DNA of 64,000 bases from Chlorokybus atmophyticus (lineage: Eukaryota; Plantae; Mesostigma and Chlorokybus algae), in assembly GCA_009103225.1 (NCBI GenBank), contig RHPI01002503.1:118391-182390 (forward strand), written 5' to 3'. The first letter of the stretch is position 1. Each line of letters begins with the position of its first letter. Positions 18,784-64,000 of this stretch are shown here, one piece after another. The notes under the pieces are model-generated. The model ran no database searches and was not told where the DNA came from. It worked only from the letters and a program-made list of their open reading frames with translations. The position numbers and the translations under genes were made by a program.

Positions 18784-21700
18784 ATGGCCTCCACCTCAGC
18801 TGCCGTGTCTGGCGCCGCCGCCGCACGGTGCTGTGGCGTTGCACACAAGCCTGCTGTGGCGCAGCGACAGCCTGCAGCTTCTGTAGTGTGCAGGCGAGCA
18901 GGAAGGTTGGAGGCCAGGCGTTGCTTGCCTTCGCTACTGCCGCATAGGAGAAGACAACGGCTGCAAGCTGCTGTTGTCTGCTGCGCCTCCGCCGCCGCCG
19001 CCTCCCCGTCCCCGCCCTCGTCCTCCGCAGCTGGCATACCCTTTGCTCAGGACTCTCATGAGCGCCCGCAGACGCCCAAGCGGCCGTTGTTTTGGCTGCC
19101 GGTATGCGTTGTGATGTGAATGTTCAACAACGAAGGTGTTGCTTAGAAAGACGCAGGGTTGTATGCAATGCACTGCTTTTGGTTGCATGTCGTATGCTAA
19201 ACATACTGCAGTAATTATCAATGGGACCGCAGTAATTGGTGCTTGCTTCTCAAATTGTTGTTTGTATGAAAGCGAGTTGCAGTTTGAGGCATGAAAACAA
19301 GGATTACAAACACGCTGGTTGCAGAGCACATGGTCAGGGTTGTCGGTAGGGGTAAACTAAAGGTTTGAGAACATAAAGCGTTCTTTTTCACTACGTTGTC
19401 GTTGAAGCAGTGTCTCCTTACCGCCGAATCGCGCGCCATGCTACTTGTGGAGCTCATCAGTATTACCCGTGTGCGTGCGTTGCGTACATGCATGCTGTGC
19501 GTAATGCATGCAGAACTGAGGTGCATGCATGCACAGCATGCTTGTACCTCGGTTTGCTTCTTGTCATAGGCTTGGACTTGTTAGACTTGTTAGTTGGTAC
19601 AACATACCAAGGCCGGTTCTCACCATGGGGGGTGGTCGTGCAGATTTTGCGTGCGCTGCCAGTAGTTGCACTGGTCACCGCTGTTAGGTTGGTCTTTCCA
19701 CAAGCAGCAGGCGCGCATTCTGTCACACTTACCAGGCCTGTTGCCATCCCCTCAAGCGAAGTGCTGGGCAGTGCATGGACAGGTCTAGTGGCAGGTCAGT
19801 GGTGCCCACGACGTTGGTGAGCTTTACACCAGAAGCAACACTTGATGCTGTTGCTATATCCTCTATATGCGGGCAAAGGCGTCAACACCCCCGTTTCCCT
19901 TTATCAGGGTGCTTGCACACGTTGACCGGGCCAGATCACCTAGCAGCCCTAGCTCCACTTTCAATCGGAAGGTATTTGTCCGATCGGGTGTAGCAATGTT
20001 TGTATGTGGCCACAATTTGTTGACAGACATACAATCCAACGCGTTTTATACCGCGGAGTTGCGCAGTAGGGTTGGTTGGTTGGTTGTAGGCATGATGCTT
20101 TTGATTAATGGGTGCTTCACAGGTCGAAGCTTCAAAGTGCCTGGGTTGGTGCCCTTTGGGGTTGCGGTCATGAGATTGGGCAGATTATTTTTGGCATCCT
20201 ATTCTTGCTTCTGAAGGTACGCTCAGCATGTCACATCAAACCTCCCAAGGCAACTTCACCAGGTTGTCTTACATCGTTGTACGTGCAGGAGCGCTTGCAC
20301 ATAGAGCTGATACGCACGTGGAGCAGTAGAGTTGCCGGTAAGCTGAGTGTTGCTTTGTCACATGCTGCATGCAAAATTGACGAATGCACAGTTTGATGGC
20401 AAGTCGGTGCTAATTTGTTCCAAGTTGCAAGCAGTCAACCACTTGTCTGGCTTGTTGCAGGGCTCACCCTGCTGGCAATCGGTGCCTTGGGCGTGCGCGA
20501 GGCGCAAACTCCTGTGGAGGTCGTTGCTGAGGCAGCTCAGGGCATTTCTTTGTCGCCTGATGGAACAGCCGCTGCAGCAATCTCAAAGCAGCGGTTCAAC
20601 ATCGCAACCTTTACAACAGGTGTGTACACAACGTATGCACAAAGACCTTGGCATTGATTTGCTACAGCACGCATGTCTCGACTTGTCTTTTTACAAGTTA
20701 TATTCAAGCAATAGAGCACATTGGTATGCGTAGGAAGGTGTCTGACCAACATAAAGCACGCAGCTGTGAGCGCCATTGTCATCACTGCTACAGATTAGCA
20801 CGTGTTGGCCCCTGTCAATCAACTTGTTGACCAGTGCTCACAGTTTACGATTGCTGTTGTGCAGGCATTGTGCATGGGCTTCAGCCGGATGCCTTGCTAG
20901 TGGTAAGTTTAACCACCATGGTTGCAAAGATTGGTAACATGGTGTGCAATCAGTCACATCAAATGCCATCCATGCAAATACCTTCATTGTATGTGTTAGT
21001 GTGCTTTGTGCATGCTCTCACGTGATTTTAACAATTAATCAGAACTTCTCTGTGCATGCAGATTCTCCCTGCACTGGCACTTCCAAAGGCGGCGGGTGCT
21101 GCATTCCTTGTCACATTCCTGATTGGCACGGTGAGTGCCTGGATGCCCCCCTCCCCCCCCCCCCNNNNNNNNNNNNNNNNNNNNNNNNNNNNNNNNNNNN
21201 NNNNNNNNNNNNNNNNNNNNNNNNNNNNNNNNNNNNNNNNNNNNNNNNNNNNNNNNNNNNNNNNNNNNNNNNNNNNNNNNNNNNNNNNNNNNNNNNNNNN
21301 NNNNNNNNNNNNNNNNNNNNNNNNNNNNNNNNNNNNNNNNNNNNNNNNNNNNNNNNNNNNNNNNNNNNNNNNNNNNNNNNNNNNNNNNNNNNNNNNNNNN
21401 NNNNNNNNNNNNNNNNNNNNNNNNNNNNNNNNNNNNNNNNNNNNNNNNNNNNNNNNNNNNNNNNNNNNNNNNNNNNNNNNNNNNNNCCCCCCCCCCCCCC
21501 CCCCCCGCCCATCAGCACGAGCACCAGCACTACACACACAAAAAAGCATCCATCCATATACCAAAGGAAGCGCATGCTGTGCGCGTTCAATGTTCTTGTG
21601 GCTGCTTGTGAGGTTCATGTTATGCAGCACAAGTTGCTGTGGTTTGAGAAAGCTGACTACTTGTGGTCTCACGCGCAGGTGTGTGCCATGGGCAGTTATA

Positions 21701-21910
21701 CGGCTTTTATAGGTGCATCCAGTGAAGCACTGAGCTCACGAGTACCGTGGGTAAGTGTTGACTCGTTGTTGGACGCCCCGATGCCTGTCAAATGCTCATT
21801 GCAATGTGTCGCAGGTGACGAAGCGTCTCAGCTTAATTTCATCAATTGTTGCAGTGGTTGTGGGTTTGCTTCTGCTTGTAGGTAATGCGCTGGGTATTGA
21901 CATCTTGTAG
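18784..21910 (+). CDS. Plastid-targeted nickel/cobalt transporter-like membrane protein (NiCoT/UreH-like)
   Basis: A Ser/Ala/Arg-rich transit peptide is followed by SAWTGLVAGCLHTLTGPDHLAALAPLSIG, ALWGCGHEIGQIIFG, GIVHGLQPDALLV, ILPALALP and AMGSYTAFIG. Ends ...GNALGIDIL* (TAG at 21910). Confidence 0.9.
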
Positions 21911-22713
21911 GCGACTACTGCCTTAGGCTGGGCTTAGGTTGCAGCTATTACTGCATCAGTTGCTATCTGTATACTAGGGCTATTCGCACGCTGTTCCTTG
22001 ATATTGGTTTTGGGCGAGCATTTTTTTGAAGCGGCAATTGCATCCCATGGTTGTGTAGTAAAGTGATTTGCGTATGTGGGGCGGCGACAACGTCACTTGT
22101 CAGTGCTGCGACAGGTCAGCAAAAGGGCCGCTCAGCCTAAATGCACACACATCCTGTACTGGCTGTCAACTGCATGCGATGAGCTTATTATGCATGCCTG
22201 AGACACCAGGCACAATCTTTGGCTGAAGCTGTCCTTAGCAGCGTTGTCACACAGCATACACAGGCTGGTCCAGCACTTAGGTGGACCGCAGGTGGGTTGC
22301 AAAAGGCAGCAATCGCAGGCTAGGCTTCCTGTTTATGAGAAATCTGCGTCTCATCAGATTATGACACTCTCACAATCTTGCTGACCAGACTAATGGTGCA
22401 TATGCAAGTACAGTAGCAAGACCCTAGGCAACTACAAGTCAGGCAACACAGCACTGTGCAGTACGGACGCATGCATACACAAGTCATGGTCGTGTGGGAA
22501 TGGGAGCGGCAGTACCACTTCATCGGCACATACAACATTGAACAAATACCCGGTGTAGAGAGCCTGCAACACTTAACACCGCTCGCACTTGACTCTGTTA
22601 CAGGGCCTGTCACCTTGTACAGGGCAAGAATGCAGTAGTCATAATATACACACATGCTGCGCTAATGTCCATCATCGAACCAGCAGCAATAAATAGCATT
22701 GAGACCAGTGCTG

Positions 22714-41622: not shown

Positions 41623-44321
41623 ATGGACGGGGCGGGAGGCGGGGCGCAGAACACCCCACGCACAGTTGAGCAGGTCTACGAAGATTTCTCACAGCGGCGG
41701 TCCGGCGTCCTTAAAGCGCTAAGCAGCGGTGAGCGACCCCTGCTGTGCGACCTGGCCGTTCTAAGCCGTGCAGCCGTGTGTATTTCTATGGCATGTTGAG
41801 TCAGCACCTTCTTGCCTTGCGTGCAGTTGCATGGGGGCAACAAATTTACGTCTCCCTGTCCGCATGCGACCTCAGCATGTTGACATTTCTTCTGGCGGCT
41901 CTCTCTCGTTATAGCTGGCAAGCTCACTCAAAAGCCTGCCCCCNNNNNNNNNNNNNNNNNNNNNNNNNNNNNNNNNNNNNNNNNNNNNNNNNNNNNNNNN
42001 NNNNNNNNNNNNNNNNNNNNNNNNNNNCCCCCCCCCCCCCCCCCCCCCCCAAAAAAAAAGTTAATGCATTGACTGGACACCGGCGGAGTTTGAGCAATGC
42101 GTCCTTGAGTGTTTGCATGTCTTGCGGCTATGACGTAGCTCAATAGATGCAGACCGTCTTGTCCGTCATGCATGCACGTCTCGTGTCATGCAATTCATAT
42201 CTGAGCGTGTCAGACATCGCTTGGGCGCAGAAATGTTTCTTGCATGGCACAGTGACCTTGTCCAAGAGCTTGTCCTGCACACTGTGTTTTATGTTTATTC
42301 AGAGATCGGTACGACAATACGACATGTTGACGCTAGTATTATGTCCTGAGGTGAAAGGGTTGTCACGCACTTCTTTGTTATGTGAACAGAGGTTGAGAAC
42401 TTTTACACGCAATGCGACCCTGAAAAGGAAAACCTATGCTTGTATGGTTACCCGGACGGCACTTGGGAGGTGGCGCTACCGGCGGAAGAAGTGCCTCCAG
42501 AGTTGCCCGAACCTGCCCTCGGTATCAACTTTGCCCGAGATGGCATGCAACGGAAGGATTGGCTATCGCTCGTCGCAGTGCATTCAGACGCATGGCTGCT
42601 GGCTGTTTCCTTCTACTACGGTGCAAGATTTGACAAGAATGAGAGGTACGTTGCTTGGTGTTGTTATGAGTCTGTGCAAAGTTGTACTTGTACGCATAGT
42701 AGCTTTTGCACGATTGGCGGGTGCAGGGAGGGTTGCACCATTTCAACGCGCAGTCGCAAGGCATCCTTCATCCATGGTTTGTTGATACACCTGTTTTGGT
42801 GAAGTGAAGTGTTTTGTGTGGCGAGTACATATTTTATGTTATCAGCAGTGGTTACGCCAGCGTACTTCCAAACTGTCTTGCATCCTCTTGCTGTTGTTAA
42901 GAGTTTCCATGCCTTTTAGGTAGCAAATGCTGTAGAGCGCAGGCTTGCCGCAGACCTGACGCCCTCGTGCATGGGAGAAAAGGAGGGGGGGGGGGGAGGT
43001 CATTTCTCTCTCATTGTTTAAAAGGAAACCTGGGACAGGCTAGCTTGTGCAAAAACAGTATTTGTAGTAGTTGTAGTAGTTGCTGGGGTTCATAAGATGC
43101 GCAACAGCTTGCACACGCCAATTTACTGTCCTTGTAGTTGCTGTCAGGCTTGCTGAACAACGTGCTTGCTGGGTAGGAAATGTGCATATTGAATTTCTGC
43201 TGTCCCCTGGGGATATATCTAAGTGTTTGCTGTGCATGAAGTCTTGTTCAACAGCATAGTTGGACTGCAGGAAACGTTTGTTCACCATGGTCAACGAGTT
43301 GCCCACAGTCTATGACATGGTGACTGGGAGGGCCAAGGCTGCTTCAAGTAAGAACTCCAACGACAACAAGCGAAAGCAGTCAACAAAGCCAGCACCTCCG
43401 GTGAGTGCAACATGTGATGACCAGTGTGGGTATCTGCTAGCACTGCTTAGGGTGACGCGTTTCATGGGACTTGCGCTCGTGGTGGGAGAGGCAAGAGGGG
43501 AAGGGTGTGGAGAGGGTGGTGCGGTTGGTGCAGTTGAGATGTAAGTTGTTCAGCACTGGTGTATGTGGATGTCATGGCCCTATTGTCTGGTTGTCTCAAG
43601 TGCGATAGCAGGAGCATGTACAGTCACTTCACGCGTGGAGGCTCTATAATGGATTATTGTTGCAGCTGCTGGGGGCCCAGAAGCTGCAATAATAATCCTT
43701 CACAGGGTGGTGATTGTCACATTACTTTTGGTTATGTTTATGTTTATATGTCTTTCGTAGTCAGTGGTAGTTGGTCATTAGTCATGGCGACGCCATTGTC
43801 ATCAGGCACAAGCGGTCAAGCACCACTAGGTCGTCACATCTTACAAGTATCAAGTTAGGTGAGTGTGTGCTGTTGTGCATGTCCTATATTGAGTTTCGGC
43901 CACTCGCTGCAATGTTCTATAAGGACGCATGCCATTGGTCGTCAGGTTGTCAGCATTATTGTGCTATCAAGTTCATCATTCTCATTTGCAATGACTGTGC
44001 ACTGTTTTGATTTGACAACATGATTAACATGTCTGTGCTCCTTCTTTGCAGCCCAAGCCGGCGGCTGCACCTGCTGCAGCAAGTGCACCGCCCTCCAAGC
44101 CCAACTACAGTGCAGATGACGGTGATTCATACGATGAGGAGGACGACGAGCAAGCGCTCTGCGGGATCTGCCAAGGCCCGTACGGTGCGAACGAGTTTTG
44201 GATTGCTTGCGACTCGTGCGAAACATGGTACCACGGCAAGTGCGTCAAGGTCACTCCGGCGCGAGCAGAGCATATGAAAAACTACAAGTGCCCACAATGT
44301 GCGAAACGAGCCCGCCCTTAG
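41623..44321 (+). CDS. Alfin-like PHD-finger protein (PAL/DUF3594 + PHD; H3K4me3 reader)
   Basis: [78 protein letters not shown] finger: [47 protein letters not shown]. Confidence 0.97.
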
Positions 44322-46428: not shown

Positions 46429-46943
46429 CTTGGCGGAGGCGGCGGACGGAGCTGTTTTGCTTCTGCCGACCAGCTTCGTAATCGAGCCGCTGCGAGCTGT
46501 AGGGATGACACGCAGTGTTTGAGAAAAATTCAAGCGCGTGCGTGCCTCGGGCGGCAGCATTAACACAGTGAGCCGCAATTTTGGTCACCATCTTGCTGCT
46601 TTTGTTCCATGCGGCGCATCGTCATTGCCGTGCTATTGTACAACCAGTCGTGGGCTGCATGCGCCTCGTGTTTCTCGGCACAGCGTGTCACGCAGTAGCC
46701 AGGCAGTCGTTGTGATTGTTACAGGCAGTCGCTGCGAGCACTACATTGCGCGAACCTTGCTGTTCCTTTTGTGCAGGTCACGGTGCTGTAGCAATTGTTC
46801 GTTGGTTGGTAGCGGACAGGCTAATTGCAACATGAGCTCGCTGTGGTCACACAGCATTTTGCCGGTGAAGGCAACGACCTCACTATGAAGTAGGCCGGGG
46901 AAACGCAATAGCTGGTGCCTTGCTGGTTTACAGCCTGGCAAAC

Positions 46944-49778
46944 ATGCCGCTGACTGAGGCGGAGGCGGAGCTTGAGCCTGAGACTGAAGTGAAGGCGTGG
47001 CCTGCGGGTGATAAGCAGAGAGGCAGCCTGATCAGCTTTGAAGATGATAGCACGGCACAGCTTGCCGTTGCAACCGAAAGCGAAGCAGCAGCAGCAAGCA
47101 GCAGCTTCACCACCGCGGTGAAGGCTGACCCGGAGCTTCAAGCAGCTGAGAAGCATAAGGTTGGTGCTCAACTTGTTGCCTATGGGTTAGGTGTGTTTGT
47201 ACCAGTTCTTTTTAAGCAAGCTGGCGCAGGGTTCTTACCGTGGTCGTACTTGTGCAGGAGGCCTTGGCGCTTGCGAAGGGAGCTGACAATGTGTTTGATG
47301 CAGCCTTCTGGGTTGAAACGAAGGCAACAACGACTGTCGACACACAAACTGCTTGCTTTCCCGCCTCGGGTGAGCAGGTATTGCTAGCCAATGGAATGGT
47401 CTGACATATTGACATGCTGTACCTGCCATTGTCTAGTTGTGAAGTTCACACCATCGATAATGCCCAGCGCAACGGTTCCTATGTCGAACTGTACATAGCG
47501 CCAGGCTCATGCCATGTGCTCGCCCACTGTGCTGCTGGTCTTCACTCTTCCCAGGCCTTCTCTGTTGTTGTCAACTGCAGAGTGGCCCAAGCAAAGACCT
47601 CTCAGAGCATGCTATCACCCGGGCTGCGCTACCAATGCCTGCTGAAACGCAGCTCGAGCAAAGCAGTTTGATTGATGACCGCTTTGAGAGCGTTGCTCGC
47701 ACTGAGCTGCCATCATCATTGATTGCCCAGTCCAGCTCCTCACAACTACTCGAGTACCAAGCGCGCATTGCAGGTGACTGCTGGCTCTTCTAACTGATTG
47801 CACACTGCCTTGCGAAAACACGTGGCATAACGGAGCTGCATTGTGTAAGCTCCAATCAACCTCGCATCTACTTGTAGCGCTCGAGCAGGAGAATGCTCAG
47901 CTAGCTGAGAAGCTGATGAGGTTGGAGCTGGAACGCATAGAGTTTATGACCGCAAAGCTGAAAGAACGGCCGCAGGCAAGCACTGACAACAGCCGTGGTT
48001 CACCGGCAATGCATACATGCAGCGATGTGTGAGTTACATGTTTCTGGTTGCAGACTCCGTCGGATGTCATTGCAGCGTGGGTCTGTGGTGACGCGGTCGC
48101 CCGCAATTCGTCACGGCTGTCATTGCAACGGTTTCGATCCCTCCAAGACAAGCAGCGGCTTCTCGCGGAAGCCGTGTGCTGGCGCGATCCTGATGTACTG
48201 CTGGCGGTCATCCTGTTCCTAAGAGTATGCCACTTGTGCCCAGTTGTCATCTGCATGCACGTGCACGCAACGCATGCGCGCGGGTATGTGTGTGGGCGGG
48301 TGGGCATGTGTGTGTGCATGGGTGCATGCGCTCACAATTATGCACGCACAAACGCAGACACGCACGCATACACACAAGCAGTGTACGTGATGTCGCAGGA
48401 CACACAGGTCCCGAAGCTATTCCTTGGAACGATTTGCGGGCACGTGTCTGCCGTGCAAGCCTATTGGAGATATCTGGAAGAGCAGGACGCGCTGCCGCAG
48501 CTGGCGGCGCTGCATAAGTACCAGCAGGACGCTCGAAGTGAAGCACTTTTGATGATCAAGTGCGCTTATCGAATGACAGAGGTATGGAGTTCATCGTGTA
48601 GCCTGCATTGTGCGACACAATGTAACGCATAGCCTTGTTGGCAGCCTGCACAGCGGCTACAGGCGTTGCAAGATGCGAGCGTGTTCTTGGGTAGAGCCTC
48701 GTGTGCAGGGCTGGAGTTTGAATGGGAGGCCATTAAGCAGGACATGGATCTCTTGCAGATTCAGGCGAAGATGGAGGTGTGCATGATGGATGCTAAGAAT
48801 ATTATGCTTGACTGCGTGAACCATCGTTGGAGCAGCTTGAGATTTGCTGAAGTGCTCATTTTCTGAGTGTCATGAAGGAGTTCGACACTCGCATGGAGGC
48901 CTCAGCCCAGGAGCCCATGTTTCAGCAACACAGAAGGCCAAGTCTGAAGTTTGCCACAGTGCGCGACGCGCTCTACTACTGCTTTTTCTTCTATGTAAGT
49001 CAGTATCTATATCTTGGTGACACTTGTTTGCAGTGACACTACAACTCACACTGAACTCGCGCTATGCTTGCTTCTTGTCTGTAGCCGTATGCACCGGAAA
49101 ACAAATTGAGCCAGGCCAACATTATCCGAGAACAGCTCTTGGTAAGATGTTGCAATTATGCTTGCATGTGTTCGAGTACTGGACATATGTTCTTGTTGTG
49201 GGTGGTTGTGTCGCTTATGGAAGTCTGCAATGGCAGGTAAGCGATCAGATGTACACATGGATGCAGCTGCTTGCAAGAGCGCAGCTGCAGGACTGGGACT
49301 CCGTGGCCAGCATACCCACATTGAAGGTAAGTTTGCATGAGATGGCCAACGCTGCCTCACTGTGTCCTCTTCCACATCTCTGTCGGATATCACCTTGTCT
49401 ATGCATGCACGACCGACTGCGTCAAATGCACAGGGCATGATCTACAAAAAGGCCATGACGCCAATCGGCTTCGGTCCGTTCGTAGAAGTGATGACCTGGT
49501 TCAACGGGCCAATGGAGCTGCGTGTGCGCTTTGCCGAGTCAATAACCGACCCCGAGCGGAAGTACCTCACATGCAGTCGGCACAGGCTGCACCAGCCCGC
49601 GATTCAAGCGCTTCTTGCGCTTGAGAGCAAAGAGACTCTGCTGCGATATCGTGTCCAGATACTGGGGGAGAACGCCCTTGAGCAAGACATTCAGACAATT
49701 GATGACGCCATTGCAGACCCGCGGCGCAAATGGAAGAGCCGCTCAGTAATCCACAGCAAGTGGCGGCCTTCACTATGA
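46944..49778 (+). CDS. VIPAS39: VIPAS39/SPE-39 (VPS16B)-like protein, VPS33B-interacting
   Basis: LSLQRFRSLQDKQRLLAEAVCWRDPDVLLAVILFLR, FQQHRRPSL...ALYYCFFF, LLARAQLQDWDSV, KKAMTPIGFGPFVEVM, LLRYR and DPRRKWK parallel what I recall of the animal VIPAS39 C-terminal domain (SLERFRSLQDK...VITAVLIFLK; KRAPIGF; IRWKN). Confidence 0.85.
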
Positions 49779-51057
49779 CCATGTATGTGTACAGACCCGA
49801 CCGTGATCCCATGCGATATATGCTGTGTTACACCCTATGCAACGCAATGCTCGCAAAGACCGGCTTGAAGACACCACAGGTACGCAATTACCTTGGTAAT
49901 GCATCTGACTCCAGTTCCACAGCGTAGCACGAACACTGGGAATGCCAATGCAATCACTATCAAGTTGCATAACCAGCATGGACGCTGCGATCATGTCTAA
50001 CATGTGTTGTGAACGCACTGCTTGTGGATACATGCTCCCTGCTCCCTGCTCCTCTGCTGGCTGTTGTATGCGGTTATATGCTGTATGTTGCATGATATGC
50101 TGCGATTGTATCTAGCCTAAGTCCAGTGTTTTTGCATATACATCAGCTGAGGTTTGATGTGCGCCAACTGCAGGTGTGACACCAACTGGTTTGTGCGACA
50201 GAGGCTGTGGCATTGGCAAAGCATGTACACATTAGTATGGCTTGGAATTGGTGAATATACTAGACATTGTTTGTCCTGCACCAATTTGCTTCTACGAGTA
50301 TCTGCATAGGATACAACAAATGACTGTTAACAGCAAGGGGCAATCACTGCATCCCTTCTTACGGAGACCTACCAGTGTCACCTGTGTCACTGCTGCTGTT
50401 GCCGAAGCTCCTGATTATACTACTCTACTGAGCTACCACGCCATTGACACCTGTGTCAGTGCAGCGGTGCCACCAAAACTTCTCATACTGTTGTACTACT
50501 GCGCTACCTCGCCAGCATATCACATTTGAAAGTTGATCGACATAAAATCTACATGCTACATTTGATCAATGCATGATACCACCAGCTAGCATGTCAATGC
50601 TGTAGCACAAGGATTGCACCTAAGCTGCATCAAAGCCATGGCCACATGAGCACATGGTTGGAGATTGCAGTGTGCTTGTGTACAATATGCATGTAACTTG
50701 CAAGCCAGAGAACACGCATCCCAACACTTGGTACGCGCGCTTATACAAGCAACTCGTAATTGTGCTCGACTTGACACCGCACAGTAGTCCGCACATTGCT
50801 ACCTGAACTACCTGAACGGTGCAGTCTCTTGCCCAGGGCGATGCCAACTGCAGCGGCCAAACTTCACAACGGAAAACAGTAACTCTGTTCTTGACCACCA
50901 AAAAGTCACTACACCAGATTGCAATAAACAGTAGCTAAGACTTGATTTGTCGTCTGTCATATATACACAAGCCAGGCGGAACATCTACAGCAGTACATTT
51001 TCATACTACCTGTTGCACACTCGGGAGCGTCGTAAATCTAAGAAAACCACAAAATTC

Positions 51058-53927: not shown

Positions 53928-56130
53928 ATGGCGCGCGGGATGTCTGCAGCGCTGCTGGTCGTCTTTGCGCTGCTTGCTGTCCAGCAGCATGCGCTAGTTG
54001 CCGCCGCCGAGGAAGAGGGCTTCACCACGGTGCTGACACCCGACAATTTCGACGACCTGGTTGGCCAGGACAAGCCCGCCCTCATTGAGTTCTACGCGCC
54101 CTGGTGAGCGAGAGCTACTGTCGGTACTGCTGCTGCTGCTGCTGCTGCTGCTGTGACTTCTGCAGGCTTGCTTCTCTGTTGAGCCTGAGAAGCATGCATG
54201 CCGTTCACATTGAACGTGCTGCGCAGCATGTTTGCTTGTCATGCTCTGTGTGAAGGAAGAGTGGCTGTGCTTGATTGCGGTGACGTTCTTATCGTTTGGA
54301 TGCCACACGTTGGAACTTCGTCACTGTTTTGTGCATGCTGATGGCTGCTCGGTTCTTTGATGTGCAGGTGCGGACATTGTAAGAAGCTCGCACCGGTACG
54401 TACGGGAGCTTGCGTGCAGTGCCAGCAATTATGTGGGCACGCTGTACGCTCTGTGTTGACTTTCTGCTGGTTCCACTTGCACAGGAATACGAGTCTCTCG
54501 CCCAAGTCTTCTCCAAGACTGGCAAGGTTGTCATTGGCAAGGTAGACTGTGACTCGCACAAGGACCTTTGTGGCAAGTTTGATGTCAAGGGCTACCCCAC
54601 CATCAAGTGGTTCAACAAGGATTCCTCAAAGCCGGACGAGTAAGCGCCTTTGCGCACAGCATGCACCAGCAATCCATGTGTTGCTCACCTTGTGACATAC
54701 TGATCATTGATCACTTGTGCAGTTACAACAGTGGAAGGACTGCAGATGACTTGGTGGCTTTTGTTAATGGCAAGATTGGTAAGCCATAGCATTGAACAGG
54801 AACGTGTGGCAGTAAACGTGACTATGAAAACGCAGTATTGTTGCGTGCTTCGGCTCATGCTTGCACCTCCAGGCACAAACTTGAAGGTCAAGAAGGCTCC
54901 AACTGCCGTGACCGTGTTGACGGATGCCACTTTTGATGCGATTGTGAAGGATCCCACCAAGGATGTCCTGGTCGAGTTCTATGCACCATGGTGTGGCCAC
55001 TGCAAGTCTCTTGCACCGGTCAGTTGCGAGACTGCAATCATAGCTTGTGGACCATCACCCAGTCCAGCATGAGTTGTTTAACTTGGTGTAATGTGTTCAA
55101 CAGGAATATGAGAAAGTTGCCGCCACCTTTGCTGCCGATGAAGATGTTGTGATTGCCAACCTCGATGCAGACAACTTCCGAGACATTGGTACCAAGTAAG
55201 TCATTGCAATATTGTTGTGTTTGTATACCACGCCCCAAGTGGCCGCCTTGGTTGAGCAGTGTTTGCATGTGATTGTTGCTACTGTCAAATAAGGTTTTGG
55301 ATGCTCAAGTAGTGGTTGCATGGGCACTTTGCAGGTATGGTGTGGAAGGCTTTCCCACCATCAAATTCTTTCCCAAGGACAACAAGGAAGGTGAAGATTA
55401 TGCGGGCGGGAGGACTCCACAAGACTTTATCAAGTTTATCAATGAGAGGGCAGGCACGCAGCGTGTCCTTGGTGGTGGTCTCACTTCAGAGGTGTGTGAA
55501 CCTTTGTTTCCGCATACCTGATTGGTCATGCCATCCATGATGCTGCTGTTTACTTTACATGGCCATGGTTCCAGTTGGTGTTCGGTGCCACGCGTGAGAT
55601 TTGTGCTCCTTTGCAGGCTGGACGGCTGGCAGACCTGGACACTGTGGTCAAGGAGTTTTTGTCCGCCGCAGAGTCAGCCCGCGAGTCCATCATTGAACAG
55701 GCTGAGAAGGCGGTGGCAGCTCTTTCTGGCAAGACCAAGTGAGTTTCTTGGTGGCAATGGACATGTTTTGCATTGCACTGCTGCACATGCCGCATGAACT
55801 CTGTCTGCAAGTGTCATGTATGACTGTCACTGAGTAATCTAGTGAGCAGACCTTGTCTAGCAAGCTCATGTAAGTTGCTGCAGGACATCCGGTGACTACT
55901 ATGTCAAGGTCATGAGGAACATTGTGAAGAAGGGAGCAACATACGCCTCAACCGAGGCGGAGCGCCTGGAGCGCATGTTGGCAGGCGTAAGTGCAGTGCA
56001 GAATATAATGTAGTGGGTATCAGTTGCTTTGATGCTGACAGTTGGTGTTTGACAGAACTTGACACCCTTGAAGTCTTCTGAGTTCTCCCTGCGCAAGAAC
56101 ATCTTGGCGGCGTTCTCCTCATCAGAGTAG
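53928..56130 (+). CDS. Protein disulfide isomerase with two thioredoxin domains and a C-terminal ERp29-like D domain (PDIL2-1/ERp38 type)
   Basis: Signal peptide [18 protein letters not shown], two WCGHC active sites ([15 protein letters not shown] and [15 protein letters not shown]), and a D domain (GRLADLD...YYVKVM...EAERLERML...LRKNILAAF). No KDEL, as expected for this class. Confidence 0.97.
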
Positions 56131-56981
56131 TTAGGTGTATTTTAGAGCTTTGCCCAAAACTTTTTGAACAGGACTGTCACGACTAGCGTTGGCCGGTGTC
56201 ATTGATTCACGATCGTTAAAAATTCATGGCAACAAGTATGTAAGTGAGCACATGTTACTCCGATCATTGCCAAGTTACTGGTACTGGCGTATTGATAACA
56301 CTGCAGCATGTCTGGTGCTTGCAAAAGACCAACAGTGGTCTTGGGTTATATGAACCAAGTATTGTAACTTGAGGAAGGTTGTGGCTCCGTAGAGTGGGGT
56401 CTCAATGCATGTGCAAAATGCATGTAGGTGTGCCACCTTCTATTATCAGCATGGGCATATAATGGTCAGTGATTTAATGCATTGATCTTACAATCTTCAA
56501 CATCGCAAAGTGCTAAGCGTGGGCACTTGACAATGAAGTAAGCACTTGATGTAGTAGCTCATGTGAGATGCAAGGTTACAAGATTGCATTTGAGTTTCGT
56601 AAAAGTTCCATTAAAAAACATTCCTTGCCTTCGCGGTATAAAAACTTGTTATACCTAGATCTCCTTCCATTGATGACATAAAAGCAATGGACTCGTTCCA
56701 TTATGAAGCTTGCACGAAATGACACTTGCTAAGTTGCGTAGCTATGGTCACATCAAGAAGGGCACGGGNNNNNNNNNNNNNNNNNNNNNNNNNNNNNNNN
56801 NNNNNNNNNNNNNNNNNNNNNNNNNNNNNNNNNNNNNNNNNNNNNNNNNNNNNNNNNNNNNNNNNNNNNNNNNNNNNNNNNNNNNNNNNNNNNNNNNNNN
56901 NNNNNNNNNNNNNNNNNNNNNNNNNNNNNNNNNNNNNNNNNNNNNNNNNNNNNNNNNNNNNNNNNNNNNNNNNNNNNNNNN

Positions 56982-56999
56982 ATGGGAGCGGTCAGGCAG
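56982..56999 (+). repeat. 18-bp sequence ATGGGAGCGGTCAGGCAG repeated at 63110-63127; fragment of a dispersed repeat next to assembly gaps
   Basis: Exact direct match between the two sites, both within AT-rich regions that contain gaps. Confidence 0.6.
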
Positions 57000-58643
57000 G
57001 GGTAAATAACTACATAGATGTTATTTACATGGGTTTATGTATTTAGAACATGCAAAATTCAAACAACCCTTAATTGCACTTGATCTGTATTATAAACGTG
57101 TGACATGATGTGATCATGCGATGGCAAGAATTTCAAAACTATCACATTTTTATCGCATGATTAGGGTCATAATTGCAATTCAAGTCATTGTGAGTAACTA
57201 GTGGGCGTGGGATTCATATTGCTTTCGCAAGCGATGCATATTTAGCATGTGAGGATCGTTATACATGTAAAAATCCACTCGACCAATAAGCATACACATG
57301 TGATTGCACTTAGTAAATGCAACATTTCAGACGCGTGGCAGTCATTGCTACATCTGTCAAGAACTAGACGTGGGTTACGTCAGTCGCATGATGTGACTCA
57401 CATGCTAAGCCACCGAATACGGATTGTGCCATATATGGCACTGAATGATTACATTTGTATGCGTGGCTCATCTATGCGGGCGCTTGAGGGCGCTCCGCTA
57501 TCATAATCATGAACTCTTTAACTTTGTAAAAGGTGGGACATAAATCATGCCTTGGGATAGGGCTTATATGCTTGCCTTGTTTTTGCATGCTCGCATACCC
57601 ACTTTTGCCATAAAAGCGGGTGCCCCCCCCCACCCCCCCCCCCCNCTTCCCTGCTCATTTATACTATAGTGCACTTACCTTAAGCTCAATTCCCTCAACC
57701 CACTGATGTTAATATGATGTGGTTTTTAAAAAAATGGGGGTACCTTTGACTTGTACTAGGAGTTGCCCTTTACTATGCTACATGATCACTTATGGTATGT
57801 GGTGTACGCACATTTATCAAGGGCAACGCACCGTGCTTTAAAAGTGTGTGATATATCATTGTAATCCTTACGGATTGACATTATCCTTACTATTCGAATA
57901 CCGTATTTGAGCAAATACGACCCCNNNNNNNNNNNNNNNNNNNNNNNNCAAATCAATGGGTGTATTGTATTATGGCTGCATTTTGCCCGTCAAAGGGGGG
58001 TTACAAACTTCGCGCCCCCCCCGCCCCCCCCCAAGTTTCGCGGGGGGGTACTGTGATAAGGGGGGGCGTCAATTCGCACAAATAGTTTGCAATTAACCTT
58101 CGTTGATTAGCATAGGTTGTAAAAGTCACACTCATAATGCATGACGGGCCGACTCAACGGTCACCTTTAACATGTGGGCATTACATCCATGTCATCAACT
58201 TGAACATAGTATGCCTATATGGCATGCAAGATGGACGGCTTTTACGCATAAACTCGTCACAGGTGCAATGCTCTGCCAACATCAGCATAGCGGCGGCGGC
58301 AGCGGCGGCGGCAGCGGCGGCGGCGGACCGGACTTCTGAGGAGCTTCTTCTTGTAAGCAACTCAAGTGGTTCGATATCTCACGACTTACTCGAGCACGGC
58401 CAGGTGGTTGATCAGCACAGCGCGGTGTGCTCTCTGTACTGGTTGCTCCAGCATTGGTTGCTTGCAGCCTGGTTGGAAAGCAGCAGGCTTACAGCGACGG
58501 CGACGTTAACGGGTTGTCCGAGGCGTTGTCTGCATCGTCAGGGTGAAGGTGCGCACACAGAATGAGGCTGGTCGGGTAGCCGAGGGGCGGCGAGAGGGTT
58601 CCCATCCTGAGGTCACAGGGGTTGGGCGCTAGGGTTCTACAAC

Positions 58644-61521: not shown

Positions 61522-63671
61522 TAGGTTGTGCGTGGAAACGAGTGTAGCAACCATTCATACAGCGCACATGTTGCAGTTGTGAAGGAGGTAATTTGCTGTT
61601 ATGTGGGGACTTGCATTGCCCGCAAGAGCCACTCATTCCTCACACGAGCCATGGTTCATACAATCAGCATGGTTGCTCTAGGTCTCAATGGTTGCCCCAC
61701 GGAGACTCCGTGTCTGTGCTGGATATGCAATGGTGAGTGTCCGGGGCCTTGTGTTCCTTCCAGCCTGCCCTTGCATAGGGTATAGGTCAGCATGTACCAC
61801 GGAAGCACCCCTGTTGCTTAGCGATCCACTTATTACACAAAAATATACCACTATGTCACATCACGTGAGTCGCTCACTGTTACATCGCAGACGTGTACAC
61901 ACTACACCCTGGCAGAATACCAACACACATGACACCGCATGCATGCAGCATATGAAGCATGAAACCTTTTGTACACAGCCGCTGGCTTCAATGTCAACTA
62001 CGCAAGAGTCGCCTCCACCTCGTGGTAGGAGGCTCAAGGGGGACCAATGTTCAGCCCGGCACCGCTGCCCCCTTGGTATAGCTCAGGTTGGCATCGTTTC
62101 CTGCCTGCTGCCATGTATAAGCGGCTGCTACCGTTTCAGGAGGTATTATAGGGCGAATGCCCCCCCTCCCCCTTTCTTAATATCGGACAAGAACCATGTC
62201 CACAGCAGGCATAGTGATACAACTGATGAGGCATGTCATTCGTGGGGCTTGCAAGGAGGAGGGTATGTTCGACTTTGTATGGTGGCAATGACATGCAATG
62301 TACATACGCACGACCAGTCTGATATGTGCTGTTCTGAGCTTGCACTACGCAAGACCGCCAAGGCCAAATCATAGTCCCGTTGCGTCACCCTTCACCAACT
62401 TTTCCATCCTTATTCATGCAAATCGTGCATAAAATATATGCACGTGCCTGCCCTGCTCTTTAACGCCTTGCTGTGGCTGTGGCTGCTGCGCCAATCTCCT
62501 GGGGTTCTCACCTTGCGCATGTGCATGTGTGCTCAGGTCGGTTGGTTCTCGCTTGCTGCTTGCCACTGCATCCTACTGCCGCCCCCCCAGAGCACATGGT
62601 GCATATATTATAATATAGTATGCAAGGATTGTGGCATGCATGAGAATGTAGCGAACATGTGCATATAATTGTGAAGCCCCTATGAGAAGTGAAGTGTTGC
62701 TCTTGCTTGTCTCCGTGTCTAATTTGCTTGCTGCTTGTGGTGCATTGGGAATGCTGCTTTGCCCTGCAATGCACGCTTATGCACACTTAGTGTACGTGCA
62801 CTACACACATGTGTATCATATTTACCCCAACATCGTGGGGATTATAATCCCCTCTATTAAATATACAATGTGTTTATACTACAAGAATTTATGATGTAGC
62901 TCGTCCCCTCGGGGGGGAGGGGGGGCGGGGGGGAGGAGAGAATTGTACATGTACATGGTTGTATAAAGCATGCAAGCTCATAAGCAAGTAAGCGAGTACA
63001 TGCTTAAACAATTCAAATTGGGGGAGCATACTGTGCTAGTAGCTCAACAACTCCGAACGCCATCTACAATTTTAGTTTATATGTGCATGTGTGTGTAAAG
63101 CAGCGGGCAATGGGAGCGGTCAGGCAGAGCAGGGCAATGCAGAGGGACAACGTGCGCGGCAAGGAGGGTGGGTGGTGGCAACGGTTGAAATACTTCTAAA
63201 AAAAAGTACTAAGTGCCTTTTTCTTGAATTTTTGNNNNNNNNNNNNNNNNNNNNNNNNNNNNNNNNNNNNNNNNNNNNNNNNNNNNNNNNNNNNNNNNNN
63301 NNNNNNNNNNNNNNNNNNNNNNNNNNNNNNNNNNNNNNNNNNNNNNNNNNNNNNNNNNNNNNNNNNNNNNNNNNNNNNNNNNNNNNNNNNNNNNNNNNNN
63401 NNNNNNNNNNNNNNNNNNNNNNNNNNNNNNNNNNNNNNNNNNNNNNNNNNNNNNNNNNNNNNNNNNNNNNNNNNNNGGGAGTCTTGTGCTTTGCGATGGC
63501 CACGGCAATGCTGTGCAATGTGTATAAACCCGGGGGGCATATGATGAGGAAAACACAATTTACATGTTGAGTGATATTAATCAAGTGTGGGACAAACGTG
63601 AGACTACACATATGTCATTATTATATCGTTTATGAGTGTCCATTACCATGTCCACTTCACGTATTTATTTT

Positions 63672-63880
63672 AAACTCAACACTCAAGTGCTACCATAGAG
63701 CTCTCGTGTTTCGTTTGTGTTGCATGTCACATAAGGTTTGTTGCGTCAATAACTGTAAGTTCCACTTTACATACACATATCTGTTTCAAACTCAACACCC
63801 AAGTGCTACTATGGAGCTCTCGTATATCGTTTGTGTGGCATGTCACAATTCAAGGTTTGTTGCGTTGATAGCTGTAATTA
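63672..63880. repeat. Two diverged tandem copies of a 116-bp unit
   Basis: AAACTCAACAC(T/C)CAAGTGCTAC(C/T)AT(A/G)GAGCTCTCGT...GCATGTCACA...AAGGTTTGTTGCGT starts at both 63672 and 63788. Confidence 0.85.
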
Positions 63881-63882
63881 CA

Positions 63883-64000
63883 TGATGAGAGTGCGTTAGG
63901 CTGCCAGGGCGGGTCCAGCGCAATCAGCTAGCCCTCACGTCGAAGGCCCAGGCCCACCCGCGACTGCACTCGTCGTATCCACGTCAGCATCATAAGCAAA
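63883..64000 (+). mobile_element. Possible start of an LTR inserted into the tandem repeat
   Basis: The second repeat copy stops abruptly at about 63880, and GC-rich sequence beginning TGATGAG follows, with GGCCCA motifs. The end lies outside the window. Confidence 0.3.

What the first reader, a model, noticed from the sequence alone, without database searches (positions are those of the whole stretch)
46944..49778. VIPAS39/SPE-39 in a green-lineage genome
VIPAS39 partners VPS33B in the animal CHEVI complex. Yeast and Arabidopsis are described with a single Vps16/Vps33 pair serving HOPS and CORVET. An intron-rich, natively integrated VIPAS39 among clearly plant-type genes implies that a CHEVI-like tether is much older than animals and was lost in land plants, or that this alga runs an undescribed endosomal or secretory tethering route.
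Basis: partly seen in the sequence, partly recalled or inferred. Interest (0 to 1): 0.7.

Follow-up and report, generated by a model that had tools for sequence, protein, structure and literature searches.

The report
VIPAS39-like tether gene in Chlorokybus
The early-branching streptophyte alga Chlorokybus has an intact, transcribed gene for a propeller-less VPS16 relative that looks like animal VIPAS39/SPE-39, a protein that recent papers call animal-only, but whether it has a VPS33B-type partner could not be tested.

Summary
Positions 46944-49778 (+) run exactly from the start codon to the stop codon of an 11-exon gene of 573 codons. Spliced transcript contigs from two independent studies support every splice junction. 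The genome is Chlorokybus atmophyticus, and the neighbouring genes are plant-type (Alfin-PHD, ClpS, thioredoxin/PDI).

The protein has a roughly 175-residue N-terminus with no domain match, a short predicted coiled coil, and a Vps16_C-type helical solenoid. It has no Vps16_N beta-propeller. Its relatives are few and about 25-34% identical. One is an Anaeramoeba protein named 'defective spermatogenesis protein'.

- **Link to Vps16:** a profile of the family matches the Vps33-binding C-terminal part of Chaetomium Vps16 (E 4e-14).
- **Closer to VIPAS39 than to VPS16:** a confident AlphaFold model fits an animal SPE-39-homolog cluster (TM 0.82) better than canonical VPS16 (TM 0.67). Language-model neighbours of its closest full-length relative are animal SPE-39/VPS16B clusters (0.94, against 0.81 for VPS16).

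I therefore file it as a VIPAS39/VPS16B-type protein. This conflicts with statements that VPS16B and VPS33B occur only in metazoans.

Not shown: a tree with named animal VIPAS39 and VPS16, a VPS33B partner or a canonical VPS16 in this genome, and loss in land plants. The public gene model mis-splices exons 4-6.

The scan's notes hold no earlier VIPAS39 finding on any DNA.

The parts
46568..46776 (+). 5' UTR intron (GT-AG). The transcript contig carries about 520 nt of 5' UTR.
   Evidence: Joint 46567|46777 in X1 contig record 1
46944..47159 (+). Coding exon 1 (72 aa). Start codon at 46944. Acidic, low-complexity N-terminus.
   Evidence: Sequence; in-frame stop at 46866-68; joint 47159|47258; no significant Pfam hit (best E 0.039)
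47258..47377 (+). Coding exon 2 (40 aa), N-terminal region without a domain match
   Evidence: Joints; no significant Pfam hit (best E 0.097)
47581..47773 (+). Coding exon 3 (64 codons plus 1 nt), Ser-rich N-terminal region without a domain match
   Evidence: Joints
47878..47975 (+). Coding exon 4. Encodes the short predicted coiled coil (ALEQENAQLAEKLMRLELERIEFMTAKLKERPQ). Followed by a GC-AG intron (47976-48053).
   Evidence: Joint 47971/47975|48050/48054 in X1 and X2; translation; aligns with EEN.QL.EKL of Anaeramoeba P0006
48054..48224 (+). Coding exon 5 (57 aa). Start of the Vps16_C-like solenoid, with the motif DPDVLLAVILFLR. The public model reads it out of frame.
   Evidence: BLASTP to P0010, 48% over 29 aa, E 1e-6; P0001 sequence
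48399..48581 (+). Coding exon 6 (61 aa). The public model omits its first 23 codons.
   Evidence: Joint 48224|48399 in X1 and X2
48645..48776 (+). Coding exon 7 (44 aa). Falls in the segment that aligns with the Vps33-contacting helices of Vps16.
   Evidence: Profile positions 118-162 align with Chaetomium Vps16 in the significant hit; the human VPS16 642-736 fragment (4bx9_C) matches the same positions only at E 1.1, which is not significant.
48878..48994 (+). Coding exon 8 (39 aa)
   Evidence: conserved with P0004 and P0010
49085..49141 (+). Coding exon 9 (19 aa)
49237..49326 (+). Coding exon 10 (30 aa), VSD..Y.W..L.ARA...DW block
   Evidence: alignment A4
49434..49778 (+). Coding exon 11 (114 aa plus stop). 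Contains the PIGFGPFVEV motif and the family-specific C-terminal helices ending in KWK.
   Evidence: phmmer against 1.84 billion proteins: P0001 self hit, then P0004 at 1.4e-5 and P0006 at 4.9e-5.
49880..50173 (+). Intron in the 3' UTR, about 100 nt after the stop. It is removed in both runs and retained in one X1 contig.
   Evidence: Joint 49876/49879|50171/50174 and record 2

Best explanation
This is a native, expressed Chlorokybus gene for a VIPAS39/SPE-39/VPS16B-type protein, a paralogue of the HOPS/CORVET core subunit VPS16. It keeps only the C-terminal alpha-solenoid, the part of Vps16 that clamps the SM protein Vps33. It lacks the N-terminal beta-propeller that builds VPS16 into the hexameric tethers. 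Shown: the gene structure, expression, absence of a propeller, homology to Vps16_C, and greater structural and feature similarity to animal SPE-39 homologs than to VPS16. Inferred: the solenoid (exons 5-11) binds a Vps33-family SM protein. The short coiled coil (exon 4) and the roughly 175-residue acidic N-terminus, which has no domain match and looks disordered by composition, would mediate self-association or partner and membrane recruitment. This would give a small SM-plus-adaptor fusion module outside HOPS/CORVET, as described for animal VPS33B-VPS16B. The family is older than animals and has been lost, or has diverged beyond detection, in most sampled lineages.
For: Spliced contigs from two studies confirm all junctions. 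The in-frame stop upstream of the ATG and a 520-nt 5' UTR leave no room for a propeller. Exons 1-3 have no significant Pfam hit. Vps16_C scores 26.2 bits against a cut-off of 21 on P0001. The family profile matches the Chaetomium Vps16 C-terminus from the Vps33-Vps16 crystal at E 4e-14. Foldseek's best PDB hits are the same chains (E 2e-5). The AF2 model has pLDDT 84.7 and pTM 0.79. The best Atlas shape match is a 'spermatogenesis-defective protein 39 homolog' cluster, TM 0.82 over 266 residues, against TM 0.67 over 230 residues for VPS16. For P0004, the closest full-length relative (34% identity, E 4e-34), the language-model neighbours are animal SPE-39/VPS16B clusters at 0.94, against 0.81 for VPS16. 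The Anaeramoeba relative is named 'defective spermatogenesis protein' and is colinear to the C-terminal KWK. The neighbouring genes are plant-type.
Against: The TM-score and language-model comparisons are proxies, and both sides are predicted models. Animal VIPAS39 did not reach E 1e-3 in the single-exon phmmer search. The Pfam score is low, and the exons on their own give no hit. The name of the Anaeramoeba protein comes from the depositors' annotation and is not a test. No VPS33B-type partner was looked for.
Confidence: 0.72

Rival explanations
1. It is a truncated VPS16 paralogue that arose independently, in this lineage or in protists, and lost the propeller by convergence. It would not be orthologous to animal VIPAS39. 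It could bind the single ordinary VPS33 and modulate HOPS/CORVET, for example as a competitor or assembly factor.
For: Only Vps16_C homology is firmly shown. The phyletic pattern is very patchy, with only seven credible relatives at E below 1e-3 among 1.84 billion representatives. No tree was built.
Against: The same architecture and a colinear C-terminus (coiled coil, solenoid, KWK end) are shared with Anaeramoeba and several unrelated environmental eukaryotes. The fold is closer to animal SPE-39 than to VPS16. The language-model neighbours of P0004 are animal SPE-39/VPS16B.
Confidence: 0.2
2. It is a contaminant, a chimeric scaffold or a recently transferred gene, and not a native Chlorokybus gene.
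For: It has no close relative in other green-lineage proteomes. An assembly gap lies 5 kb upstream, at 41945-42027.
Against: It has ten spliceosomal coding introns plus UTR introns and a GC content like its surroundings. Plant-specific Alfin-PHD, ClpS and PDI-type genes flank it on the same contig with no gap in between. Identical spliced transcripts occur in runs of the same organism from two studies eight years apart. The nearest relatives are only about 30% identical, so there is no recent donor.
Confidence: 0.03
3. It is a decaying or non-functional remnant, transcribed but without function.
For: It is more divergent than other family members at some conserved positions (for example PIGFGPF, and a weak Pfam score). 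An intron lies about 100 nt after the stop, which could make the mRNA a target of nonsense-mediated decay.
Against: The 573-codon frame is intact across 11 exons, with the conserved blocks in place. A confident helical model was obtained. The gene is expressed in two data sets.
Confidence: 0.05

Closest known systems
Animal VIPAS39 / VIPAR / VPS16B (C. elegans SPE-39, Drosophila Vps16B), partner of VPS33B
   Same: A propeller-less protein of about 450-570 aa. It has a long N-terminus without a recognised domain, then a Vps16_C-type solenoid. The predicted fold of the Chlorokybus C-terminal 283 residues matches an animal SPE-39-homolog cluster at TM 0.82. The closest full-length relative has animal SPE-39/VPS16B clusters as its nearest language-model neighbours.
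   Different: Sequence similarity to animal proteins was too low to reach E 1e-3 with one exon. Orthology was not tested by a tree. A partner SM protein is unknown. The host is a photosynthetic streptophyte, whereas the literature calls the pair metazoan-only (PMC10208892, PMC6005816).
Canonical VPS16 (yeast Vps16, human VPS16, Arabidopsis VCL1), core subunit of HOPS and CORVET
   Same: Homologous C-terminal solenoid, the region that binds Vps33 domain 3b in the Chaetomium Vps33-Vps16 structures (4KMO, 5BV1).
   Different: It has no Vps16_N beta-propeller and is 573 aa, against 834-835 aa for the canonical VPS16 seen here. Its Vps16_C score is weak. The last 80 or so profile positions (the family-specific C-terminus) are not matched by Chaetomium Vps16. 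The fold match is poorer (TM 0.67 against 0.82).
Anaeramoeba flamelloides 'defective spermatogenesis protein' (KAJ3440469.1, P0006)
   Same: Same order of parts: a long N-terminus without a recognised domain, EEN.QL.EKL coiled coil, solenoid, PIGF.PFV motif and a ...KWK(N) end. It is colinear over 206 residues, E 7e-16.
   Different: Only 25% identical. It has a longer, Lys/Asn-rich N-terminus. It has no Pfam hit at all. It has not been characterised.

Membership tests
VIPAS39 / SPE-39 / VPS16B | C-terminal alpha-solenoid homologous to Vps16_C (the Vps33-binding part of Vps16) | tested here: met
   Pfam PF04840 scores 26.2 bits against a cut-off of 21 on P0001. The family profile matches 4kmo_B at E 4e-14. 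Foldseek matches 5bv1_B at E 2e-5.
VIPAS39 / SPE-39 / VPS16B | No N-terminal Vps16_N beta-propeller; total length about 450-570 aa | tested here: met
   The protein is 573 aa. An in-frame stop lies upstream of the ATG in the same exon, and the mRNA contig of 2345 nt is fully accounted for. Exons 1-3 have no significant Pfam hit.
VIPAS39 / SPE-39 / VPS16B | Groups with animal VIPAS39 and not with VPS16 in a phylogeny | tested here: inconclusive
   No tree was possible, because named animal VIPAS39 and VPS16 sequences could not be fetched. The proxies favour VIPAS39: Atlas TM 0.82 (SPE-39 homolog) against 0.67 (VPS16), and language-model scores of 0.94 against 0.81 for relative P0004. The Anaeramoeba relative is named 'defective spermatogenesis protein'.
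VIPAS39 / SPE-39 / VPS16B | Binds the SM protein VPS33B, and a VPS33B paralogue is present in the same genome | not testable with these tools
   Only this 64-kb window can be read. The scan's notes hold nothing on VPS33 or VPS16.
Canonical VPS16 (HOPS/CORVET core) | Vps16_N beta-propeller followed by Vps16_C | tested here: not met
   No propeller is encoded. The N-terminus is about 175 residues of low-complexity sequence plus a short coiled coil.
CHEVI complex (VPS33B-VIPAS39) | Stable complex of a VPS33B-clade SM protein with the VIPAS39-type subunit, outside HOPS/CORVET | not tested
   This needs the partner gene and a binding assay or a multimer model.

The most novel reading that the evidence does not exclude
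The VPS33B-VIPAS39 (CHEVI-type) fusion module is not an animal invention. It would be an ancient eukaryotic paralogue pair, present at or near the last eukaryotic common ancestor. It would survive in scattered lineages, including one of the earliest-branching streptophytes, and would have been lost before or during the rise of land plants. Chlorokybus would then run a post-Golgi or recycling-endosome tethering route that no plant model has.
Probability: 0.3. Interest if true: 0.7.

Novelty: new member of a known kind. Interest (0 to 1): 0.5.

Why it matters
Recent primary papers state that VPS33B and VPS16B/VIPAS39 exist only in metazoans (PMC10208892; also PMC6005816). They discuss the pair in terms of animal-specific organelles and ARC syndrome. 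An expressed VIPAS39-type gene in a streptophyte alga, with relatives in Anaeramoeba and other protists, moves the origin of at least this subunit far back. It also makes one question directly testable: does the partner SM paralogue co-occur with it, and what did this module do before animals existed? The finding also corrects a public gene model, which destroys the first helices of the domain.

Tried and rejected
- **Exon-level scans:** Pfam and PDB sequence scans of single exons, and of the exon 5-intron-exon 6 read-through, gave no relevant hit.
- **Word-based protein searches:** all three returned almost nothing. P0001 found only itself. Alignment A1 was swamped by low-complexity words from the N-terminus. 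The conserved-region alignment A3 added only P0010. Named animal VIPAS39 and VPS16 sequences therefore could not be obtained, and no tree was built.
- **Metagenome scan:** I did not repeat it, because unnamed environmental sequences would not settle orthology.
- **Earlier notes:** the scan's notes hold nothing on VPS16, VPS33 or VIPAS39.
- **Literature:** searches found no description of VIPAS39 or VPS33B outside animals. The Anaeramoeba paper does not mention it.
- I used exon references, the public model P0001 and its correct part, P0001:250-532.
- **Rejected readings:** a canonical VPS16 fragment (there is no propeller and the N-terminus is complete) and a contaminant (the context is native).

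Full report
**Observation**

The finding's coordinates are exactly the start and stop of a gene on the + strand. The ATG at 46944 is preceded by an in-frame TGA at 46866-68 in the same exon. The reading frame ends with the TGA at 49776-49778. I derived an 11-exon model from splice signals. I then laid public run contigs of the same organism on 46500-50300.

Two runs from different studies (X1 from 2021, X2 from 2013) contain contigs in which the coding introns are removed at the predicted sites. The runs are not recorded as RNA. The exon-only, spliced contigs show that they are.

- X1 covers all ten junctions and X2 covers seven.
- Nine introns are GT-AG. The intron at 47976-48053 is GC-AG.
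- There is also a 5' UTR intron (46568-46776) and an intron about 100 nt after the stop (49880-50173).
- The 2345-nt X1 contig is fully accounted for by about 520 nt of 5' UTR, 1722 nt of coding sequence and 103 nt of 3' sequence. No further coding exon can lie upstream.
- The protein has 573 residues.

**Source and context**

The public protein with 100% identity to the last exon is jgi/Chlat1/6227, also known as EP00898_Chlorokybus_atmophyticus_P005807. This agrees with earlier notes of the scan.

The flanking genes are an Alfin-PHD protein (42440-44321 +; Alfin PF12165, E 8e-39), ClpS (near 51.3-51.9 kb, - strand) and a thioredoxin/PDI-type gene (from 54.4 kb). GC content is even across the locus. 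The gene is native.

**Public model error**

The public model P0001 has 532 aa and differs from the transcripts between exons 4 and 6. It replaces 91 true residues with 50 residues read in the wrong frame. The 91 residues are FMTAKLKERPQ, all of exon 5, and the first 23 codons of exon 6.

The lost part includes the conserved motif DPDVLLAVILFLR. That motif matches P0010 at 48% identity over 29 residues (E 1e-6). It corresponds to the start of Pfam Vps16_C.

**What it is**

Single exons are too short for Pfam or PDB sequence hits. I therefore searched the last exon (114 aa) against 1.84 billion representative proteins.

- The search returned eight hits below E 1e-3. One was the protein itself (P0001) and one was a repeat protein that I discount (P0002).
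- The credible relatives were P0004 (590 aa, environmental), P0006 (684 aa, Anaeramoeba flamelloides, named 'defective spermatogenesis protein') and four fragments.
- A later profile search added P0010 and P0011, from a EukProt transcriptome.

Pairwise matches to the correct C-terminal 283 residues are:

| Relative | Identity | Aligned length | E-value |
|---|---|---|---|
| P0004 | 34% | 177 aa | 4e-34 |
| P0010 | 27% | 230 aa | 6e-22 |
| P0006 | 25% | 206 aa | 7e-16 |

The match to P0006 is colinear up to the shared ...KWK end.

The full-length members share one plan: a long low-complexity N-terminus, a short coiled coil (EEN.QL.EKL), then a helical domain. Pfam Vps16_C is the only family found. 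It scores 26.2 bits (cut-off 21) on P0001 and 52.8 bits on P0004.

A profile of the family matches the C-terminal part of Chaetomium Vps16, from the Vps33-Vps16 crystal structures, at E 4e-14. No VIPAS39 chain is in the PDB copy.

**VIPAS39 or VPS16?**

- **No propeller.** The protein has no Vps16_N propeller. This is the architectural difference between VIPAS39 and VPS16.
- **Fold.** An AlphaFold2 model of residues 250-532 of P0001, made with the nine-sequence family alignment, has pLDDT 84.7 and pTM 0.79. In the ESM Atlas its best shape match is a cluster named 'spermatogenesis-defective protein 39 homolog' (Mollusca; TM 0.82, 266 residues, rmsd 2.8). The next is canonical VPS16 (TM 0.67, 230 residues). 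In the PDB the best matches are the Chaetomium Vps16 chains bound to Vps33.
- **Language-model neighbours.** For P0004 these are animal SPE-39 homolog and VPS16B clusters at 0.94 (24 of the 30 nearest), against 0.81 for VPS16. For the Chlorokybus fragment they are arthropod and nematode Vps16_C clusters at 0.92-0.95.
- **C-terminus.** The family-specific C-terminal 80 or so profile positions are not matched by Chaetomium Vps16.

These lines agree, but they are proxies. I could not fetch named animal VIPAS39 or canonical VPS16 sequences, because the word-based searches returned almost nothing. No phylogeny was therefore made.

As the operators require, the joined 573-aa model was not sent to any search or fold. 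I used exon references, P0001 and P0001:250-532.

**How it probably works**

Shown: the solenoid is homologous to the Vps16 segment that holds Vps33.

Inferred: it binds a Vps33-family SM protein. Without a propeller it cannot take VPS16's place in HOPS or CORVET. It would then form a small SM-adaptor module like animal VPS33B-VPS16B. That complex contains two opposed VPS33B molecules and acts in Golgi-endosome and recycling traffic (PMC10208892, PMC13748641). The coiled coil and the acidic N-terminus would provide self-association or recruitment.

Which SM protein it binds is unknown.

**Comparison with the literature**

[quoted passage not shown] PMC6005816 says metazoans additionally possess VPS33B. 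PMC11513930 describes CHEVI as paralogues of VPS33 and VPS16 'in mammals'. Arabidopsis work describes one core containing VCL1/VPS16 and VPS33 (PMC5877921).

Six full-text searches found no description of VIPAS39 or VPS33B outside animals. The Anaeramoeba genome record already carries an SPE-39-type name. The family's wider range is thus implicit in databases, but I found no paper that discusses it.

**Distribution**

No relative above about 35% identity exists among 15 billion proteins. No land-plant protein appeared in the single-exon search. That fits loss in land plants. It is weak evidence, because the family evolves fast.

**Verdict**

The gene is a real, expressed and misannotated member of the VIPAS39/VPS16B kind in a streptophyte alga (confidence about 0.7). 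The step from this one subunit to 'a CHEVI-like tether' is untested.

Noticed in passing
window 47941-48470 (exons 4-6 of the gene): The public Chlorokybus gene model (jgi/Chlat1/6227, 532 aa) uses splice sites that the transcripts do not support. It reads exon 5 out of frame and drops 23 codons of exon 6, so the first conserved helices of the Vps16_C-like domain are lost.
   Followed up: yes
window 47976-48053: A GC-AG intron, used in the transcript contigs of both runs. A GT donor 51 nt downstream (48027) would also keep the frame but is not used.
   Followed up: partly
window 48225-48398: Intron 5 is rich in GCA/CAC/GTG-type simple sequence and has no stop in the exon frame. Exon 5, the intron and exon 6 therefore read through as one 176-codon ORF, which could mislead ORF-based gene callers.
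   Followed up: no
window 49880-50173: A spliced intron lies about 100 nt downstream of the stop codon. It is removed in both runs and retained in one X1 contig. This could mean control by nonsense-mediated decay, or overlap with a downstream transcript.
   Followed up: no
window 41945-42027: An assembly gap (a run of N) is followed by a C homopolymer of about 24 bases. It lies just upstream of the Alfin-PHD gene.
   Followed up: no
window 42440-44321 (+): An Alfin-like PHD-finger gene (Alfin PF12165, E 8e-39; PHD E 2e-11). This is a plant-type chromatin reader and serves as a marker of native context.
   Followed up: partly
window 20001-22000, 56001-58000, 62001-64000: Three AT-rich troughs (GC 0.42, 0.37 and 0.42) against a background of about 0.52. 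They were not examined.
   Followed up: no
L002:1-393 and 359-1183: The environmental relative P0008 sits on a 1268-bp JGI contig. An overlapping upstream ORF of 130 aa there may be the frame-shifted N-terminal part of the same protein.
   Followed up: no
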